Virus record (IMG/VR): IMGVR_UViG_3300023179_000009
Coordinates: 394,814-458,813 of that record
Strand: one strand, 5' to 3'
DNA length: 64,000 nt
Positions 45,691 through 52,155 of this stretch are shown piece after piece. The notes beneath the pieces were generated by a model. The model saw only the letters and a program-made list of their open reading frames with translations, had not been told where the DNA came from and did not search any database. A program made the translations under genes and the position numbers. Positions within the stretch are counted from its first letter, which is position 1, and each line of letters begins with the position of its first letter.

Positions 45691-46386
45691 ATGGATCAGA
45701 TGTTACTCATCGATTGCTGTGCTAGCTCTGGATTCGAACTACAACTTAGTGAGTCTACTATGAAAGGTGGACTCACTAAATTTCGTGGCAAGTTCCAAGA
45801 AGCTGAAGCAGTAAACAAAAACAAAAGAATGTACCCTTTTGATGTGCTAAGTGAAAACATTGGCCGTCTTCAAGAGGCAATAGATGATCGTAGACTTGTT
45901 GGAGAGCTAGATCACCCAACAGACTCTATTATACATTTTGCAAATACATCTCACGTAGTTACCAAACTATGGTGGGAAGGAAACGTTCTCATGGGCGAGG
46001 GCGAAATCCTAAACACACCGTCTGGTATGATTTTGAAAAGTCTTATTGATGGCGGCGTTAAAGTTGGTATCAGTTCAAGGGGAGTTGGTAATGGAAAGGT
46101 GAACGAAGATGGCATTCTTGTCATCGGTGAGAGTTATAAACTTATCACATTCGACGCCGTTGCAGACCCCAGCACTTTTGCTGCATTCCAAGAAAAAGTC
46201 GTTGCTAAAGGTGAGAGTTTTAATCCTCAAGTTAAAGAGCAAATTCGTTCTACACAACAAAAATCAAAAATTGCTGTGAAAAATGAAAGCTCCAGCATAC
46301 ATAATGTTAACAAAGAGGTATTAATCGCTTACTTAAGCGGCTTTGTAAAATCTCAAACACAAGAAATTAAGTCGAGGTTAGGCTAA
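45691..46386 (+). CDS. gp21: Prohead maturation protease (gp21)
   Basis: NKNKRMYP, GELDHP, SHVVTKL, ILNTPSG, GISSRGVG, ITFDAVADPS. Confidence 0.95.
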   Translation: MDQMLLIDCCASSGFELQLSESTMKGGLTKFRGKFQEAEAVNKNKRMYPFDVLSENIGRLQEAIDDRRLVGELDHPTDSIIHFANTSHVVTKLWWEGNVLMGEGEILNTPSGMILKSLIDGGVKVGISSRGVGNGKVNEDGILVIGESYKLITFDAVADPSTFAAFQEKVVAKGESFNPQVKEQIRSTQQKSKIAVKNESSSIHNVNKEVLIAYLSGFVKSQTQEIKSRLG

Positions 46387-47282
46387 TGGATAAAATTACT
46401 GAAGCATTGAAGAGCATCCTTCCTGCTGAGCATGTCAATGAGGTTGCCAAAGCCGTCGAAGAAATGATGGCTGAAAACGTCGCTGCACTCGAAGCGGAGT
46501 TCCAATCCAAATTGGACGAGGCTTACGAGCAACTTACTGAAGAACGTAAGGCTGATGAAGTCATCGCTGAAAATGGCTATCAACAAGCCTATGACATGAT
46601 TCAGTCTTTGATGGCTCGTTTGGATGAACAACGTGAAGAATTCGAAACAGCGTTAGAAGAAGGCTTTGAAGAAGCCTATAGCGAACTACAAAAAGAAAAA
46701 GGTCGCAACGAAACTCTTGAAGTAGAAATATACGAAGAAGCAGATAAGAAACTTCAAGAAATGAAGAGCATGATGGTTGACAAACTTGATCAATTCTTGT
46801 CGCTACAAGAACAAGAAATGTACGAGTCAGCCAAACGTGATGTTCTCAGCGATCCAAGCATACTTGAGCAAAGAGTTGCAGTTGAGAAGATGGCTGAAGT
46901 CCTTGCTGATTATATCGGTGACGACACCATCAACAATGCAACATCGGCCAAACTTGAAGAAATGCAAAAACAAGTTGAAGCCCTTAAAGGTCAAATGAGA
47001 ATTATTGAAGCCAAAAACGTTCGTCTTGCTACTCAAAACAACAAGTTGACCGAGCAAGTCCGTGAGGCTCACGAAGTGATCACCGAGGCTGCAAAAGCCG
47101 AGAAAACGAATAGATTGAATAAGAAAGAGAATGCAAGTGGGCGTGGACAAAGAGTTGTGAACGAGCAAATTATTAGTGAATATGCCGCTCCAACTGAAAA
47201 ATCGGCAAAAGAGGCTGACCTGCGTGAGGGTCATGATCCTTTAGCCGATCTTCTGGTTCTTTCAGGTCTTGAACAAACCTGA
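46386..47282 (+). CDS. gp22: Prohead scaffold protein (gp22)
   Basis: Acidic coiled-coil protein between gp21 and gp23. Confidence 0.85.
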   Translation: MDKITEALKSILPAEHVNEVAKAVEEMMAENVAALEAEFQSKLDEAYEQLTEERKADEVIAENGYQQAYDMIQSLMARLDEQREEFETALEEGFEEAYSELQKEKGRNETLEVEIYEEADKKLQEMKSMMVDKLDQFLSLQEQEMYESAKRDVLSDPSILEQRVAVEKMAEVLADYIGDDTINNATSAKLEEMQKQVEALKGQMRIIEAKNVRLATQNNKLTEQVREAHEVITEAAKAEKTNRLNKKENASGRGQRVVNEQIISEYAAPTEKSAKEADLREGHDPLADLLVLSGLEQT

Positions 47283-47328: not shown

Positions 47329-48774
47329 ATGAACGCACGTTTCCTCAACGAAGCACGTGAGATCGAGACCAGATGGTCCAAGCCTCTTCGTAACGGCAAG
47401 TCGATGCTTGATGGCATCACCGACCGCTACGAGAGAGCTTCTGCCGCTGTTCTTCTCGAAAATCAACGTCTTATGAACGAAGCTATGACCGACAGTGGTG
47501 ACATTTCGCAATTCAAAAGAATTTCGATACCACTCGTCCGTCGTATCTATCCACAATTGATCGCCAACAAAATCGTTTCGGTCCAACCATTACTTGGCCC
47601 AACCGGTTTGGTCTACTATCTCCGTTTTAGATACTCTTCAAACAAGGGTGCTATGCGTGGTGCTGACCTCAATAGCGGCTTTCCAAGCGACGACGCAACA
47701 TCGTTACAACAACTTGCTAGCGGTGATGGCAATTTAGACATCTTCTACACTCATCAATTTGTTCAAAATGAAACAAGTTCGACTGATGCTGGCGGAGATA
47801 CAACTTCAGTGTATGCTCCACTTGAGCACACTCCAGTTCTTGCCGGAACCGTGACTGGCACCGTTTATGACGGCTCAGTTGCTGTTCAAACATTTGTTGT
47901 TGCCGAGAATGGTACTTTCACCTTCACCGACATCGGAACCCCATCTGCTAAAGCAACTGGCGGCACCGTTGATCTTGTGACTGGCGAAATGACCCTTACT
48001 TGGAACAACGATCCAGGTGCTAACAATGTTGTTGTTTCATATGAATACAACATGGAATGCAATCAAGATCTGCCTGAAGTCAACCTCGTTGTTGAATCAG
48101 AAGAAATTGCTGCTAAGACTCGTAAGTTGAAGGCTGCTTGGAGCTATGAAGCCCAACAAGATCTTCGCTCACAGCATAACCTCGACGCCGAAGCCGAACT
48201 CACCGCAGTTCTCGCTCAGGAAATAAATTTGGAGATAGATAGAGAGGTGCTAACTGACCTTCGTAATAACGCTGGTACAGTGGCTGTGTGGGATTTCAAT
48301 ACTGCTCTCGGTGACACCATCAAAGAGAAGTATGAATCACTCTATGTGAAGGTTGTTGAAGTCAGCAACGTTGTGCATCGTAAGACACTTCGTGGTGGCT
48401 GCAACTGGCTCGTGACTTCACCTGAAGTTGCATCAGTTTTCGAAACTGCTACAGCCGGTTTTGCACCAGCCCCAAGTGAGACTTTCACAAGTTCGCTCGG
48501 CATCCAATATGTTGGCACAATCAACAATCGTTGGAGACTGTATAAGGATCCACTGTTCCCACAAGGTCAAATCCTCATGGGTTACAAGGGCGACAGTTAC
48601 ATGGACAGCGGATACTTCTACTGCCCATACGTGCCACTCACCCAAACCCCAGTCGTACTCGACCCAGAGTCGTTTTGTCCTCGCAAAGGAATATTAACAA
48701 GATATGGGAAAAAGTTGCTTAGAGAGGGAGCAAAGTTCTACGCCCGCATGAGCATCGCAAATTTCATCGTGTAG
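47329..48774 (+). CDS. gp23: Major capsid protein (gp23)
   Basis: LLENQ, IPLVRRIYPQLIA..IVSVQP, KTRKLKAAWSYEAQQDL, QEINLEIDRE, YCPYVPL, GILTRYG. Confidence 0.97.
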   Translation: MNARFLNEAREIETRWSKPLRNGKSMLDGITDRYERASAAVLLENQRLMNEAMTDSGDISQFKRISIPLVRRIYPQLIANKIVSVQPLLGPTGLVYYLRFRYSSNKGAMRGADLNSGFPSDDATSLQQLASGDGNLDIFYTHQFVQNETSSTDAGGDTTSVYAPLEHTPVLAGTVTGTVYDGSVAVQTFVVAENGTFTFTDIGTPSAKATGGTVDLVTGEMTLTWNNDPGANNVVVSYEYNMECNQDLPEVNLVVESEEIAAKTRKLKAAWSYEAQQDLRSQHNLDAEAELTAVLAQEINLEIDREVLTDLRNNAGTVAVWDFNTALGDTIKEKYESLYVKVVEVSNVVHRKTLRGGCNWLVTSPEVASVFETATAGFAPAPSETFTSSLGIQYVGTINNRWRLYKDPLFPQGQILMGYKGDSYMDSGYFYCPYVPLTQTPVVLDPESFCPRKGILTRYGKKLLREGAKFYARMSIANFIV

Positions 48775-48807
48775 TGTAAAACCCTAGTAATTAGGGATAA
48801 AATAAAC

Positions 48808-48837
48808 AAAACCCTTGGCAGAAATGCCAAGGGTTTT
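48808..48837 (+). terminator. Rho-independent terminator after gp23
   Basis: AAAACCCTTGGCA-GAAA-TGCCAAGGGTTTT perfect hairpin with T-tract. Confidence 0.9.
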
Positions 48838-48865
48838 TTATTTGTTTTTTTAGAGCAAAAAACTA

Positions 48866-48894
48866 TTGCGTGAAATTTTAATTTGTGATACTAT
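48866..48894 (+). promoter_or_regulatory. Sigma70-type promoter TTGCGT-N17-TACTAT with extended -10 TG
   Basis: Spacing 17; immediately upstream of the endonuclease gene pair. Confidence 0.55.
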
Positions 48895-48914
48895 ATTGAG
48901 ATAGGAGAAATCTC

Positions 48915-49277
48915 ATGTACGAAATAAAATGTCCTGTGTGTGGTCAAAAAAGATCTGTCAGGGCTAAAAAACCTTGGATGTCAGGGGAGCCACCGTTTTC
49001 AAAAATCTGCAAGAGTTGTTGCCAAAAAGGCAAAGAAAAAACTCCGGAGTGGCGGTCAAAACTTTCGGAATCAATCAGGATTCTTCAAACTGAAGAAGTG
49101 CTTCAAAAAAAGAGCCAGTTTATGAAAGACCACCCTGAAGTTTGGAAAGAAAACCTTATATTTGGACAATCTGCCGGATGGAACAAAGGCAAGAAAATGC
49201 CCAAAACCTCTGATGAAATTAGAAAAAAGATATCGGATTCTTTAAAAACTACTTTAAGAAAAAAGAAAGACAATTAA
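48915..49277 (+). CDS. Zn-ribbon/NUMOD3-like DNA-binding protein (homing-endonuclease related)
   Basis: CPVC...CKSCC; WNKGKKMPKTSDEIRKKISDSLK NUMOD3-like motif; no catalytic domain seen. Confidence 0.6.
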   Translation: MYEIKCPVCGQKRSVRAKKPWMSGEPPFSKICKSCCQKGKEKTPEWRSKLSESIRILQTEEVLQKKSQFMKDHPEVWKENLIFGQSAGWNKGKKMPKTSDEIRKKISDSLKTTLRKKKDN

Positions 49278-50401
49278 TGAACATTGAAGAATTTAAAATT
49301 AAATTTAAAAAAAATTTTTATAGAGACAAAATTGACATTAATTGTGGTGTTGAAGGTTGTCATCGATTATCTCACGTAAACAAAGATTCAGCTTTTAGAA
49401 ACATAAAAAAATATGGAATTTTCAAATGCCGAAATTGTTGCTACACAGTCGATGGTAAAAAAAGAATATCAGAGGCCACTTCTTACGAACGGTCGCCCGA
49501 TACATGTGAAAAAATGTCAAAAGCCAAAAAATCTTTTTACCAAACTGAGCGGGGTCAAGAATTAAAAAACAAACTATCTTTGGCAACAGCCGAAAATCAC
49601 ACGGTTCATAAATTTGATAAATTTAAAAGAAAAGGGGTTTTTCAATCCAAGAAGACTGGAAAAAAATTGTCATATGACTCTTCTTATGAGTTATTGCTTT
49701 GTTGGATGTTAGATTCAGATGAATCTGTGGTGGATTTTGAAACTCAATTAGTATTTAAAATAAACAATAGAGGAAGGTGCTTAGATTGCCTTATCACTTA
49801 CAAAGCGGGTAATAAAAAAGCAATAGAAATGAAACCAAAAAAAAGAATAGATGAATTTAAAGAACAAATTAATGATAGTAGAGAATATGCAAATCAGAAT
49901 GGGTGGGATTTTCAATTAATGACAGAGGATGATTTGGGCATGAGCTATAAGGAGATAAAAATTTGGGCTGACGAATACAGATCCAAGACCGAAGGAGTAG
50001 ATTACTCTGCTTATAGAAGAGAAATCAATAAAAACAAGGCCAAAAAATATTATCAGTCTCGTATTGCCAACGATAAAGTCGAAGTTTATTGTGAATATTG
50101 CAAAGAAATCCACAACCCACTTCGTTTAACTTATGACAGAAATATTGTTCGTAACGGTCGATATGTTTGTGAACGAGAGGGTGGACATATAGCTGGCAGC
50201 AAACCCAAGCCGCATCTTAAAAAGACTAACCCCTATGAATCAGAAGGTAAGAAAGAATGCAATGCCTGCCAATCTGTTCTTGCTTTGGATCTGTTTAGTG
50301 CTGGTAAGAATATTTGCAAAAGTTGTAGGGCTAAGAAATATAAGGAAAAATATAAGGATAAAAAAACTTGTAATTTAGATACAAGTGTTTTTTTGTCCTA
50401 A
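49277..50401 (+). CDS. TnsA-N-like PD-(D/E)XK free-standing endonuclease with Zn-binding and NUMOD3-like modules
   Basis: YDSSYELLL...DFETQ...LDCLITY...AIEMKP; RSPDTCEKMSKAKK; several CxxC pairs. Confidence 0.7.
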   Translation: MNIEEFKIKFKKNFYRDKIDINCGVEGCHRLSHVNKDSAFRNIKKYGIFKCRNCCYTVDGKKRISEATSYERSPDTCEKMSKAKKSFYQTERGQELKNKLSLATAENHTVHKFDKFKRKGVFQSKKTGKKLSYDSSYELLLCWMLDSDESVVDFETQLVFKINNRGRCLDCLITYKAGNKKAIEMKPKKRIDEFKEQINDSREYANQNGWDFQLMTEDDLGMSYKEIKIWADEYRSKTEGVDYSAYRREINKNKAKKYYQSRIANDKVEVYCEYCKEIHNPLRLTYDRNIVRNGRYVCEREGGHIAGSKPKPHLKKTNPYESEGKKECNACQSVLALDLFSAGKNICKSCRAKKYKEKYKDKKTCNLDTSVFLS

Positions 50402-50409
50402 AATTACCA

Positions 50410-52155
50410 CTAACTTAGTTTTGAGATAGCTTCGTCATCAAACATAGAATTTTTTGCCTTCAATGCCCCCTCTCTGGGCCAATTTTTCCTAGCCTCTATT
50501 TCTTGCTTTGAAACACTCACTAAAGCTATTTTAGACTGAACATTTCCATATTTTTTTAAAAGTTCATCAAAATCTTTAGAGTATTTTTCATTTGGACCAT
50601 CAATGAAAATGGGGGCCAATATTACGTGGTGATTTTTAGTAACTAAACAATTGGCTATATTTGCTTTACGATTTCCACTAATAGTTCTTAAGAATCTTAC
50701 AGTTTTGTCTTTGGTCACTAGTCCGTATTGTTCTTTATGTTCCTTAACTTTTGGATGAGTAGAAAGCCATTTATTTATAGCTGGATATTTTTGCTTAATT
50801 TTATCACTATGATTTATTTCGCCCAAAACCGACTGGGGAACATCTATAAATTCTATAGTTCTAGCATCTATCATTTCAGGAGTTGCCCTGAAATTTGTCC
50901 CACTAATACTCGATTGAATTCTGGAAGAAATTTTTCTTTTTTTTCTTAATTCTTCTAAAGTAATTTCTCCAGCAGTATACCTTATGCAATCAACGCTTGT
51001 GTAAATGTGAACACCCGTGTGCGGTTCGGGCGTGTTCCAATAGAGTTCATTTGTTTTATATGGATAATGAGAAACTCTTAACGCAGACTGGATTACCGTG
51101 TTATAAGGAGTCTCTGAACTTCTAAAATCATGCCAAAAAAATATCAAAGGTATAAAACCTAATTCGGTTGATCTGGTGCATGTCTGATTTATCAAAAATA
51201 TTTTTTTTGGACCACCGTAGTAGTCGGACCAGCTTTTTGAAGAACTGTTCTGCCAACCCCAGTTCATGCTGTCATTTTGATCTACTGCTACAAATTTAAT
51301 ATTAAAATTTAAAAACAGCCAGTCTTGAACTTTCTTACTGTTCTTAAGAGAATTGTAATCTGGACCAATTTTTAAATTTTTATTAGCCACTCTAAGGATA
51401 GAAAAAGGCTTGTCTGATTTAGTGAATTCTTTGAGCAATGAAACTGCTTGTTGAGATGGAACTATATCTACCTCTTCATCGTAAACAAAAAAATGATCGG
51501 CTTCATGAACTAAATTATTATCCAAGTGCCACTTTGCCCCTCTGTAAAAATGGGGCGTAGGAAACTTGAAAAAATCACAGTTTTTCCCATAATTTGAATG
51601 TAAAATTTCTTCATTCGATCCAGATAGGTATCTTAAGAAGATTTTCTTTTTAGTGTTATTTTTTTCTAAATCATCTATAGTCTTACACAGTTTTTTAAAT
51701 AATTTATTCATTTTTTGTCTACAGTCTGTTCCGTAGTCACTTTCATCTAAAAATATAAAAATCATATTGTTCTCTGATTGGTACAATTTTTTAATATGAT
51801 TTAAAATTTCTTTTTCTTTTCTTGCGACAAAACACTCTATTCCATATTCTCTCATTTCTTTGTGTTGCTCTTTATTGTCTTTTCGATCCAAGCTAGTGAT
51901 CATTATAAAATTAAGATCTATATTTGACGCTATTTTTTGCCTGAGGCATTCGATTATTTTAAATTCTCTTTTGCCAACTTTTGGCTCAGCATCGATAATA
52001 ACCCTTGAGCAATTTTCATATTTTTTAACAAAATCAACATGCTCAAGTCTATTTTCTTCGAAAAACTTGTAGCTTCTTATCCCTTTGGCATGTTCGTTGT
52101 CCGATTTTAAAGTCTTTAGGCCGGGAATGTGGTATTTAAAACTAGTATTTTGCAT
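50410..52155 (-). CDS. Divergent SF2 helicase-like P-loop protein
   Basis: AEPKVGKR (Walker A-like), IFLDESDYG (Walker B), YLSGS, TVIQSALR. Confidence 0.5.
   Translation of the reverse strand: MQNTSFKYHIPGLKTLKSDNEHAKGIRSYKFFEENRLEHVDFVKKYENCSRVIIDAEPKVGKREFKIIECLRQKIASNIDLNFIMITSLDRKDNKEQHKEMREYGIECFVARKEKEILNHIKKLYQSENNMIFIFLDESDYGTDCRQKMNKLFKKLCKTIDDLEKNNTKKKIFLRYLSGSNEEILHSNYGKNCDFFKFPTPHFYRGAKWHLDNNLVHEADHFFVYDEEVDIVPSQQAVSLLKEFTKSDKPFSILRVANKNLKIGPDYNSLKNSKKVQDWLFLNFNIKFVAVDQNDSMNWGWQNSSSKSWSDYYGGPKKIFLINQTCTRSTELGFIPLIFFWHDFRSSETPYNTVIQSALRVSHYPYKTNELYWNTPEPHTGVHIYTSVDCIRYTAGEITLEELRKKRKISSRIQSSISGTNFRATPEMIDARTIEFIDVPQSVLGEINHSDKIKQKYPAINKWLSTHPKVKEHKEQYGLVTKDKTVRFLRTISGNRKANIANCLVTKNHHVILAPIFIDGPNEKYSKDFDELLKKYGNVQSKIALVSVSKQEIEARKNWPREGALKAKNSMFDDEAISKLS

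What the first reader, a model, noticed from the sequence alone, without database searches (positions are those of the whole stretch)
48218..48735. Short synonymously recoded patches in the most conserved parts of gp23, beside an endonuclease pair
Seen: gp23 mostly uses ATC/ATT, AAC, CGT and GAA. Two patches of about 40-50 nt switch to ATA, AAT, AGA, GAG, CTA/TTA and GGG/GGA: 48218..48255 (QEINLEIDREVL) and 48688..48735 (GILTRYGKKLLREGA). A weaker case is near 47518..47530. The protein motifs remain conserved. Known: free-standing homing endonucleases cut conserved codons of adjacent genes, and the carrier is immune through local sequence differences. Inference: these are self-immunity or escape scars from the 48915/49277 nuclease(s) or from CRISPR targeting, marking the target sites.
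Basis: partly seen in the sequence, partly recalled or inferred. Interest (0 to 1): 0.6.

Follow-up and report, generated by a model that had tools for sequence, protein, structure and literature searches.

The report
Recoded capsid-gene patches beside mobile nuclease
In a 459-kb freshwater phage, two short silent-change patches in the major capsid gene are imported DNA tracts; the one at the gene's end lies on a family-wide hot spot beside a mobile nuclease gene, as expected of a homing-nuclease target, though cutting is untested.

Summary
Both patches are the two least codon-adapted windows of gp23 (synonymous-shuffle P about 0.004 and below 0.001). Against the nearest relative (L003), 57 of the 63 differences after 48037 fall in two tracts, 48177-48282 and 48669-48771, and all are silent.

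Patch 2 is the left edge of a cassette swap running from 48669 to 50019. It also sits on a family-wide hot spot. In 15 independent close pairs, the Thr and Arg codons at 48697-48702 are the two most changeable of 481 codons. Alleles next to a nuclease gene are de-optimised there; nuclease-free alleles are not.

The cassette lies just after the gp23 terminator. It encodes a TnsA-like PD-(D/E)xK nuclease (p374) and a small zinc-finger protein (p120), which is not a nuclease. An empty-site and occupied-site pair exists among relatives (L051, L054).

Patch 1 rewrites 11 of 12 codons of the most DNA-conserved stretch of gp23. Its only near match is a distant relative, L084. Nothing links it to the adjacent nuclease.

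The weak case at 47518 is not a patch.

Verdict: the homing-nuclease reading is well supported for patch 2 and only plausible for patch 1. No cleavage was tested.

The parts
47329..48774 (+). gp23-type major capsid protein gene (481 aa). GC is about 47% in a genome of 34.9% GC.
   Evidence: Pfam PF07068 E 8e-86 and PHROG 138; genome GC; no paralogue in the 458,813-bp genome.
48177..48282 (+). Patch 1: a 106-nt tract with 24 synonymous differences from the nearest relative. The core at 48220-48255 has 11 of 12 codons changed from the family consensus.
   Evidence: The core differs from consensus at 13 of 36 nt; 80 relatives differ at 0-8. It is the most DNA-conserved window of gp23 in relatives. 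The only near match is L084, 58/63 identical in 48217-48279 against 69-77% elsewhere.
48669..48771 (+). Patch 2: a 103-nt tract with 33 synonymous differences from the nearest relative. It is the left flank of the cassette swap.
   Evidence: From 48712 on it is closest to L069 and L077, the carriers of the most similar cassette.
48697..48708 (+). Synonymous micro hot spot (Thr-Arg-Tyr-Gly codons) inside patch 2. Candidate nuclease recognition or cleavage site.
   Evidence: The Arg codon differs in 12 of 15 independent close pairs and the Thr codon in 9 of 15, the top two of 481 codons; P(max>=6 of 8 closest pairs) = 1.5e-4. Two pairs with identical gene bodies (L074/L073, L021/L020) first differ at 48699, as does the empty/occupied pair L051/L054, whose bodies are 98.9% identical. 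These are the only 4 differences in the last 217 nt compared in that pair.
48808..48847 (+). Intrinsic terminator of gp23 (13-bp stem plus T run). The cassette begins just after it.
   Evidence: A homologous hairpin, differing at a few stem positions, is present in L069. In L054 the insertion point lies right after the equivalent terminator.
48870..48897 (+). Promoter-like site upstream of p120. This is a consensus match only.
   Evidence: The region is visibly similar to L069 in the alignment.
48915..49277 (+). p120: a small CxxC zinc-finger protein with weak NUMOD3-like motifs. Probably the split-off DNA-binding module of the nuclease. It is not a nuclease.
   Evidence: No nuclease domain; NUMOD3 below threshold (E 0.22 here, 0.004 in the L069 homologue). 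Homologous segments lie inside the same ORF as the nuclease in L073 and L002. Its stop overlaps the p374 start.
49277..50401 (+). p374: a TnsA-like PD-(D/E)xK endonuclease flanked by zinc-ribbon modules. Near-invariant residues are E138, D170, E184 and K186.
   Evidence: Pfam PF08722 33.6 bits (cut-off 26.5). AF2 model pLDDT 85 with best PDB matches TnsA 1t0f and 1f1z at E 2e-6. Conserved residues from alignment A1. 50020-50368 is 95% identical to the nuclease gene of L003, which marks the right junction of the swap.
50410..52155 (-). p581: a protein of unknown function in the same low-GC island. Possibly a ResIII/DEAD-like ATPase (a lead only).
   Evidence: No Pfam or PHROG hit. 82% identical homologue in L001. 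Atlas feature search points to viral clusters, some with ResIII.
47518..47530 (+). It is not a recoded patch.
   Evidence: Identical in L001 and L003 and variable across the family.

Best explanation
Both patches are short gene-conversion tracts in a gp23 that is otherwise almost identical to its closest relatives.

Patch 2 marks the zone where a mobile, free-standing TnsA-like PD-(D/E)xK nuclease gene interacts with gp23. This gene family sits immediately after the gp23 terminator in many relatives, in either orientation and with shuffled DNA-binding modules.

The inferred mechanism is as follows. The nuclease cuts nuclease-free genomes in or near the Ile-Leu-Thr-Arg-Tyr-Gly-Lys-Lys codons (about 48691-48714). 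The break is repaired from a co-infecting carrier. The repair copies the cassette together with the last roughly 60-100 nt of gp23. Carriers are protected because those codons are silently rewritten. In this window, the tract 48669-48771 and the cassette up to 50019 replaced what the closest relatives carry.

Patch 1 is a separate import. It brings a rare, strongly non-consensus allele into the most conserved DNA stretch of gp23. The most likely reason is escape from some sequence-specific nuclease that recognises the consensus.

What is shown: the mosaic structure, the hot spot, the association with nuclease presence, the nuclease fold and the empty/occupied sites. What is inferred: cleavage, its position, immunity of the carrier, and any selective cause for patch 1.
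For: 1. Significance of the patches and their tract structure.

2. Swap boundaries. WIN and L003 are 96% identical up to 48668, similarity resumes at 50020-50368 (95%), and the terminator, promoter region and p120 are homologous to L069, L077 and L075.

3. The nuclease family lies downstream of gp23 in 32 related loci, within 700 nt of the stop codon in 26 of them (plus the window itself), on either strand.

4. L051 is an empty site. L054 has a 1656-nt cassette inserted right after the terminator, with flanks 98-99.9% identical. The only 4 differences in the last 217 nt compared are silent and lie at 48699-48708. L053 diverges from L051 from 48715 into its cassette.

5. Among 15 independent close pairs, the Arg codon (48700) differs in 12 and the Thr codon (48697) in 9, the top two codons of the gene; P = 1.5e-4. 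The 3' end carries tracts in 9 of 12 independent close pairs.

6. Nuclease-adjacent alleles are de-optimised at 48685-48735 relative to the gene body (-0.45 against -0.15, P = 0.0017). GGR at 48706 occurs in 16/26 against 2/21 (P = 0.0003). CGT at 48700 occurs in 0/26 against 6/21 (P = 0.005). Gene-body usage is similar in both groups.

7. The nuclease assignment rests on PF08722, the TnsA fold and the E-D-ExK residues.

8. Patch 1 falls on the most conserved DNA window. It differs from consensus at 13 of 36 nt against at most 8 in 80 relatives. Its changes include GAA to GAG twice and GTT to GTG, which run against the genome's AT bias (P = 0.02 under genome codon usage). The allele is shared with the distant L084.

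9. Background knowledge: free-standing homing endonucleases of T4-type phages cut a neighbouring gene and co-convert its flanks, and T4 segD lies between genes 23 and 24 (PMC2988022). Nuclease genes mark the boundaries of genetic exchange and cluster near capsid genes (PMC10448857).
Against: No cleavage or homing data exist for any member of this nuclease family.

Across the family, similarity of the nuclease does not predict similarity of the gp23 3' end (partial Mantel r = 0.09, P = 0.07). Carriers of p120-type cassettes share no common patch-2 allele.

Differences between close pairs rise steadily toward the very end of the gene. Crossovers at the edge of a variable island would also produce that pattern.

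The class comparison was dereplicated but not fully corrected for phylogeny.

For patch 1: carriers of the nearest nuclease homologues keep the consensus. L084 shows no nuclease downstream. The patch-1 region shows tracts in only 3 of 12 independent pairs, no more than another region of the gene.

Most patch codons are simply genome-typical.

Confidence: 0.55

Rival explanations
1. Ordinary mosaic recombination with no nuclease role. Co-infecting relatives exchange short tracts. The 3' end of gp23 is hot only because it is the last stretch of homology before a hypervariable island. The patch codons reflect donors with AT-rich, genome-typical codon usage.
For: Short tracts occur elsewhere in gp23 and in upstream genes between close relatives. 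Differences rise toward the gene end. Most patch codons are the genome's preferred ones. Co-phylogeny of nuclease and 3' end is weak.
Against: Isolated clusters of 3-4 silent changes at 48699-48708 occur in pairs whose flanking sequence, including the rest of the 3' end, is nearly or wholly identical: L051/L054 on both sides, L021/L020 with one further difference. The codon state there tracks nuclease presence while gene-body usage does not. The patch-1 core changes more codons than genome usage predicts and falls on the most conserved window.
Confidence: 0.25
2. Escape from host defence (a CRISPR spacer or a restriction system) that targets the conserved capsid-gene sequence, mainly at patch 1.
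For: Patch 1 rewrites the most conserved DNA stretch, which would be an attractive protospacer. The allele appears in two distant gp23 backgrounds. The genome shows strong restriction-type avoidance, with CGCG absent.
Against: No spacer was found, although only one exact 23-nt pattern was scanned in one genome per species. GATC and TCGA, the palindromes lost in the patch, are not avoided in the genome (O/E 0.93 and 0.81), and gp23 keeps 7 and 8 copies of them. One or two changes suffice for CRISPR escape, whereas 13 occurred.
Confidence: 0.1
3. Functional rare-codon clusters that slow translation, or an RNA or regulatory element embedded in gp23.
For: Both patches lie in conserved protein motifs. 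Patch-2 codons are non-optimal in many relatives.
Against: The patch-1 codons are absent from 80 relatives, which keep optimal codons. Patch-2 sequences vary between near-identical genes instead of being conserved. No operator-like similarity to the cassette promoter was found.
Confidence: 0.03
4. Assembly chimera: the metagenome assembler switched between co-occurring strains inside conserved gp23.
For: The genome is a metagenome contig. Close relatives coexist in freshwater samples.
Against: An independent sample from another study holds 97% of the sampled 31-mers of 47329-50400. The patch alleles must exist in reads in any case. Comparable mosaics recur in many independent contigs.
Confidence: 0.05

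Closest known systems
Free-standing homing endonucleases of T4-type phages (Seg and Mob proteins; segD lies between genes 23 and 24; SegG, SegF and MobE cut the neighbouring gene)
   Same: A nuclease gene in an intergenic slot next to an essential conserved gene. Patchy presence among close relatives. Flanking sequence replaced along with it. The position downstream of the major capsid gene matches T4 segD (PMC2988022).
   Different: The catalytic domain is TnsA-like PD-(D/E)xK, not GIY-YIG or HNH. The host is a roughly 459-kb freshwater phage. The DNA-binding part is split off as a separate small protein in this genome. Cleavage and homing are untested.
Nuclease genes at boundaries of genetic exchange in ICP1 and other phages (T5orf172 and HNH HEGs; PMC10448857)
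   Same: The nuclease gene sits exactly at a recombination seam, close to a capsid gene, with shuffled DNA-binding modules.
   Different: A different nuclease superfamily. Here the seam can be resolved to a 12-nt synonymous hot spot inside the capsid gene.
Tn7 TnsA
   Same: Sequence profile and fold of the nuclease core; E-D-ExK residues.
   Different: No TnsB- or TnsC-type neighbours were seen. There is no transposon architecture. The core is fused to or accompanied by zinc ribbons, DUF7487 repeats, NUMOD3-like motifs or a Mom/GNAT-like domain.
PD-(D/E)xK homing endonucleases such as I-Ssp6803I and the Vsr-like EDxHD family such as I-Bth0305I (recalled from memory, not tested here)
   Same: A restriction-enzyme-fold nuclease used for homing.
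   Different: Those are intron-encoded. This one is free-standing and TnsA-like. No sequence comparison was made here.

Membership tests
Free-standing homing endonuclease gene | Encodes a DNA endonuclease domain | tested here: met
   PF08722 above the gathering score, TnsA fold at E 2e-6, near-invariant E138/D170/E184/K186. Catalysis itself is untested.
Free-standing homing endonuclease gene | Present or absent at the same intergenic site among close relatives, without disrupting genes | tested here: met
   L051 is empty; L054 and L053 are occupied, with flanks 98-99.9% identical and the insertion right after the gp23 terminator. The family lies downstream of gp23 in 32 related loci.
Free-standing homing endonuclease gene | Co-conversion of flanking sequence with the nuclease gene | tested here: inconclusive
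   The window's tract from 48712 on, plus the intergenic region, matches carriers of the closest cassette. L053 diverges from 48715 into its cassette. The family-wide correlation is weak.
Free-standing homing endonuclease gene | Cuts the nuclease-free allele near the insertion site; the carrier allele is resistant | not testable with these tools
   Only indirect evidence: a synonymous hot spot at 48697-48708 and codon states that track nuclease presence.
Free-standing homing endonuclease gene | Modular DNA-binding domains of homing-endonuclease type (for example NUMOD3) | tested here: inconclusive
   NUMOD3 hits are all below the Pfam cut-off (E 0.22, 0.005, 0.004). DUF7487 repeats and zinc ribbons are present in relatives.
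Tn7-like transposon (TnsA as part of a transposase) | TnsB- and TnsC-type partners next to TnsA | tested here: not met
   The neighbours p120 and p581 have no transposase or AAA+ regulator domains in Pfam. The wider genome was not searched for TnsB or TnsC.
CRISPR escape mutations | A host spacer matching the consensus sequence | tested here: inconclusive
   An exact 23-nt degenerate pattern in one genome per species hit only another gp23 gene. No spacer database was available.
Conserved rare-codon (translational pause) cluster | The same rare codons are kept in orthologues | tested here: not met
   Patch-1 codons are absent from 80 relatives. Patch-2 codons vary between near-identical genes.

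The most novel reading that the evidence does not exclude
A previously undescribed family of free-standing homing endonucleases built on a TnsA-like core drives a DNA-level arms race on the major capsid gene of huge freshwater phages. This arms race would leave a 12-nt synonymous hypervariable site and, in this genome, a second target (the most conserved 36 nt of gp23) rewritten codon by codon and passed between distant lineages as a small resistance tract.
Probability: 0.3. Interest if true: 0.65.

Novelty: new variant of a known kind. Interest (0 to 1): 0.5.

Why it matters
Homing endonucleases are thought to shape phage genomes, but their targets are known for only a handful of laboratory phages. 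Here comparison alone narrows a candidate target to about a dozen bases in an uncultured 459-kb phage, for a nuclease type (TnsA-like) that the papers searched do not describe in this role. This gives a directly testable substrate pair: nuclease-free allele against carrier allele. It also shows that clustered silent changes in conserved genes can serve as a search signature for nuclease targets. The general principle is already established, so the advance is incremental.

Tried and rejected
Ectopic conversion from a gp24-like paralogue: the genome has no second gp23-like gene and no other copy of either patch.

Patch 1 unique to this genome: at first only the window's own contig matched a strict degenerate pattern in IMG/VR and the JGI metagenomes. 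A looser pattern then found L083, L084 and L085, and L084 shares the allele. The claim of uniqueness was therefore dropped.

Guide of the TnpB-like gene in L003 aimed at gp23: only a chance 12-mer match.

Operator-like similarity between the cassette promoter and gp23: no better than shuffled sequence.

Restriction-site avoidance as the cause of patch 1: GATC and TCGA are not avoided.

CRISPR spacer scan: the single hit was another gp23 gene on a contig binned as Acidobacteriaceae.

Family-wide co-phylogeny of nuclease and gp23 3' end: not significant.

Patch-1 region as a recurrent exchange hot spot: only 3 of 12 independent pairs, so not distinctive.

The nuclease was analysed from 49334 onward. 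One search ran the promoter and terminator consensus scan over window 48600-50600, a range that spans those places, by coordinates only.

No phage record matches the cassette DNA. gp23 DNA matches only one uncultured 595-kb phage, at 71%.

The PDB sequence search for p374 gave nothing meaningful.
Full report
**Setting**

The window is the last 64 kb of a single 458,813-bp contig. That contig is a JGI lake metagenome contig with 34.9% GC. Three head genes lie in a row: a prohead protease (45691-46386), a scaffold-like gene (46386-47282), and a gp23-type major capsid gene (47329-48774; Pfam Gp23, E 8e-86).

gp23 is followed by a strong terminator (48808-48837 plus a T run). After that comes a low-GC island (about 0.31) with three genes:
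- p120 (48915-49277)
- p374 (49277-50401)
- p581 on the opposite strand (50410-52155)

Public phage records hold only one distant DNA match to gp23, an uncultured 595-kb phage at 71% identity, and no match to the island. IMG/VR holds 390 stretches encoding relatives. The best 80 (81-98% protein identity) were fetched with their flanks.

Yes. gp23 prefers ATC, CGT, GAA, GGC/GGT and CTC/CTT. Three of its four ATA codons, its only CTA and its only GGG lie in the two patches.

Mean log relative adaptiveness in sliding windows was compared with 5000 shuffles that permute synonymous codons within the gene. The lowest window lies at 48673-48711 (P about 0.004). The second lowest non-overlapping window lies at 48217-48252 (P below 0.001).

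The comparison with close relatives is stronger. L003 and L001 are 96% and 92% identical to the window over several kilobases. Within gp23, all 63 differences from L003 after position 48037 are synonymous:
- 24 lie in 48177-48282
- 33 lie in 48669-48771
- 6 lie in the other 529 nt

The patches are therefore replaced tracts of about 100 nt each in an otherwise near-identical gene.

It is not a patch.

One qualification applies to the word 'rare'. gp23 (about 47% GC) is the outlier in a 35% GC genome, so most 'rare' codons in the patches are the genome's usual ones.

**The neighbours**

p374 is a nuclease. The evidence is:
- It scores above Pfam's cut-off for the TnsA-like endonuclease N-terminal domain.
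- An AlphaFold model built on 27 homologues (pLDDT 85) finds Tn7 TnsA as its best solved match (E 2e-6).
- The family alignment keeps E138, D170, E184 and K186, the E-D-ExK pattern of this fold.

p120 has no nuclease domain. It has CxxC pairs and weak NUMOD3-like motifs, all below the Pfam cut-off. In L073 and L002 the homologous segment is part of the same ORF as the nuclease. p120 is therefore best read as a split-off DNA-binding module. The 'endonuclease pair' is one nuclease plus a partner.

Relatives of p374 carry other N-terminal modules: DUF7487 repeats, or a Mom/GNAT-like domain.

**Mobility of the nuclease gene**

In the 80 loci, this family is by far the commonest gene downstream of gp23 (32 loci). 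It lies within 700 nt of the gp23 stop codon in 26 of them (plus the window itself), on either strand, while the rest of the region is hypervariable.

L051, L053 and L054 form a natural experiment. L051 has an empty site. L054 carries a 1656-nt cassette inserted immediately after the gp23 terminator, with flanks 98-99.9% identical to L051. L053 carries a different cassette.

In the window itself, similarity to L003 ends at 48668 and resumes at 50020-50368 (95%), inside the 3' part of the nuclease gene. The terminator, the promoter region and p120 are homologous to those of L069, L077 and L075, whose gp23 genes are only 72-76% identical to the window's. So 48669-50019 was exchanged as a block, and patch 2 is its left flank. 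From 48712 to the stop codon, the window is closest to L069 and L077 (85% in 48712-48771, against 73-76% for the gene body).

**Patch 2 lies on a family-wide hot spot**

Between close pairs of relatives, differences pile up in the last 100 nt of gp23. Tracts are present there in 9 of 12 independent pairs.

Inside this zone there is a sharper signal. In 15 phylogenetically independent close pairs, the Arg codon at 48700 differs in 12 and the Thr codon at 48697 differs in 9. These are the two most changeable of 481 codons, although both residues are invariant. For the 8 closest pairs the counts are 6 and 5, and a count of 6 is reached in 0.015% of random placements.

Two pairs with 100% identical gene bodies (L074/L073 and L021/L020) first differ at 48699, and so does the empty/occupied pair L051/L054, whose bodies are 98.9% identical. 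In L051/L054, the only four differences in the last 217 nt compared lie at 48699, 48700, 48702 and 48708. L053 departs from L051 at 48715 and stays different into its cassette.

The codon state also tracks nuclease presence, as the table shows.

| Measure | Nuclease-adjacent alleles | Nuclease-free alleles | P |
|---|---|---|---|
| Codon adaptation of 48685-48735 relative to gene body | -0.45 (n=18) | -0.15 (n=21) | 0.0017 |
| GGA or GGG at Gly 48706 | 16 of 26 | 2 of 21 | 0.0003 |
| CGT at Arg 48700 | 0 of 26 | 6 of 21 | 0.005 |
| GGR fraction in gene body | 0.20 | 0.14 | similar |

These tests were dereplicated at 97% and 90% identity. They are not fully corrected for phylogeny.

**Limits of the patch-2 evidence**

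Across the family, nuclease similarity does not predict similarity of the gp23 3' end (partial Mantel r = 0.09, P = 0.07). Carriers of p120-type cassettes share no common allele. The zone is a fine-grained patchwork. Part of the rise in differences toward the gene end is what crossovers at the edge of any variable island would give.

**Patch 1**

The 36-nt core (48220-48255) differs from the family consensus at 13 positions, which is 11 of 12 codons. The 80 relatives differ at 0-8 positions, with a median of 4. This core coincides with the single most DNA-conserved window of gp23 in the relatives, whether the window is 24, 30 or 36 nt long.

Drawing codons from the genome's own usage, 11 or more changed codons are expected with P = 0.02. 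Two GAA to GAG changes and one GTT to GTG change run against the AT bias.

A strict degenerate pattern found only the window's own contig in IMG/VR and in 241 million JGI metagenome records. A looser pattern, requiring only an AGR codon for the Arg, found three more contigs. One of them, L084, shares the allele: 58 of 63 positions are identical in 48217-48279, against 69-77% elsewhere, and the next-best relative reaches 51 of 63. The window carries four further private changes in the core: ATC to ATA twice, CTC to CTA, and ACC to ACT.

Patch 1 is therefore an imported short tract carrying a rare allele that occurs in two distant gp23 backgrounds. That is the pattern expected for a selected escape allele.

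The link to the adjacent nuclease is missing, however:
- L069, L077, L079 and L075 keep the consensus at patch 1.
- L084 shows no recognisable nuclease downstream.
- The region shows tracts in only 3 of 12 independent pairs.

**Alternatives tested**

- The genome has no gp23 paralogue that could have donated the patches.
- There is no match between gp23 and the region downstream of the TnpB-like gene in L003.
- There is no operator-like similarity between the cassette promoter and gp23.
- The palindromes lost in patch 1 (GATC, TCGA) are not avoided in the genome.
- A scan of one genome per prokaryote species for the consensus patch-1 sequence found only another gp23 gene and no CRISPR array. 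This is a weak negative.
- An assembly chimera is unlikely. An independent freshwater sample from a different study holds 97% of the sampled 31-mers of 47329-50400.

The nuclease was analysed from 49334 onward. One search scanned a coordinate range that spans those places for promoter and terminator consensus only.

**Comparison with what is known**

Free-standing homing endonucleases of T4-type phages cut a neighbouring essential gene, are inherited by double-strand-break repair with co-conversion of the flanks, and exclude the markers of nuclease-free relatives. T4 segD lies between genes 23 and 24, and its target is unknown (PMC2988022). Nuclease genes occupy the boundaries of genetic exchange and cluster near capsid genes in many phages (PMC10448857).

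The present case works like these. It differs in three ways: the nuclease core is TnsA-like rather than GIY-YIG or HNH, it sits in a 459-kb uncultured phage, and comparison resolves a candidate target to about 12 nt. In the paper library, no article linked TnsA-like nucleases to free-standing homing next to capsid genes. It is not a Tn7-type element, because its neighbours show no transposase partners.

**Verdict**

It is well supported by comparison for patch 2 (mobile nuclease cassette, hot spot, allele association). It is only plausible for patch 1. It is wrong about the third site and about 48915 being a nuclease. Cleavage, its position and immunity remain inferences.

Noticed in passing
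whole genome (G000) and loci L001-L085: The tetranucleotide CGCG is completely absent from the 458,813-bp genome (about 297 expected). GCGC and AGCT are depleted (O/E 0.30 and 0.39). 59 of 85 related loci also have zero CGCG, including 12-13 kb loci with 58% GC. This suggests restriction avoidance or a DNA-modification constraint shared across this phage group.
   Followed up: partly
L003:6663-8150: A TnpB-like gene (Cas12f1-like TNB domain, E 2e-11) occupies the same island downstream of gp23 in the closest relative, in place of p581. The slot collects several kinds of mobile elements.
   Followed up: partly
L003:5108-6604, L001:8690-10186, L004:7523-9157, L010:8390-9865: Several relatives fuse a Mom/GNAT-like domain to the TnsA-like nuclease core (L010 fuses it to DUF7487 repeats instead). 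This domain combination is unusual and its role is unknown.
   Followed up: no
L082 (CAVSYW010000005.1, 933,350-bp contig): A gp23 gene of this family, with apparent frameshifts, lies on a 933-kb contig binned as an Acidobacteriaceae MAG. This could be a mis-binned or chimeric contig, or a very large phage. Its downstream gene starts with a zinc-finger-like module.
   Followed up: no
window 50410-52155 (-): p581 has no Pfam or PHROG hit. Language-model features place it near viral clusters, some carrying ResIII/DEAD domains. An 82% identical homologue lies in L001.
   Followed up: partly
L069 (equivalent to window 48451-48486) and L016 (equivalent to 48670-48705): The other two most extreme anti-consensus synonymous patches among the 81 gp23 genes belong to loci that also carry the nuclease directly downstream. 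L069 carries the closest homologue of p374.
   Followed up: no
L084:5039-6235 (-): This ORF has a MerR-type HTH at its N terminus, and its C-terminal part gives a 27% tblastn match to gp23 residues 302-476.
   Followed up: no
Read-level checks were therefore not possible, and later analyses avoided these letters as queries.
   Followed up: yes
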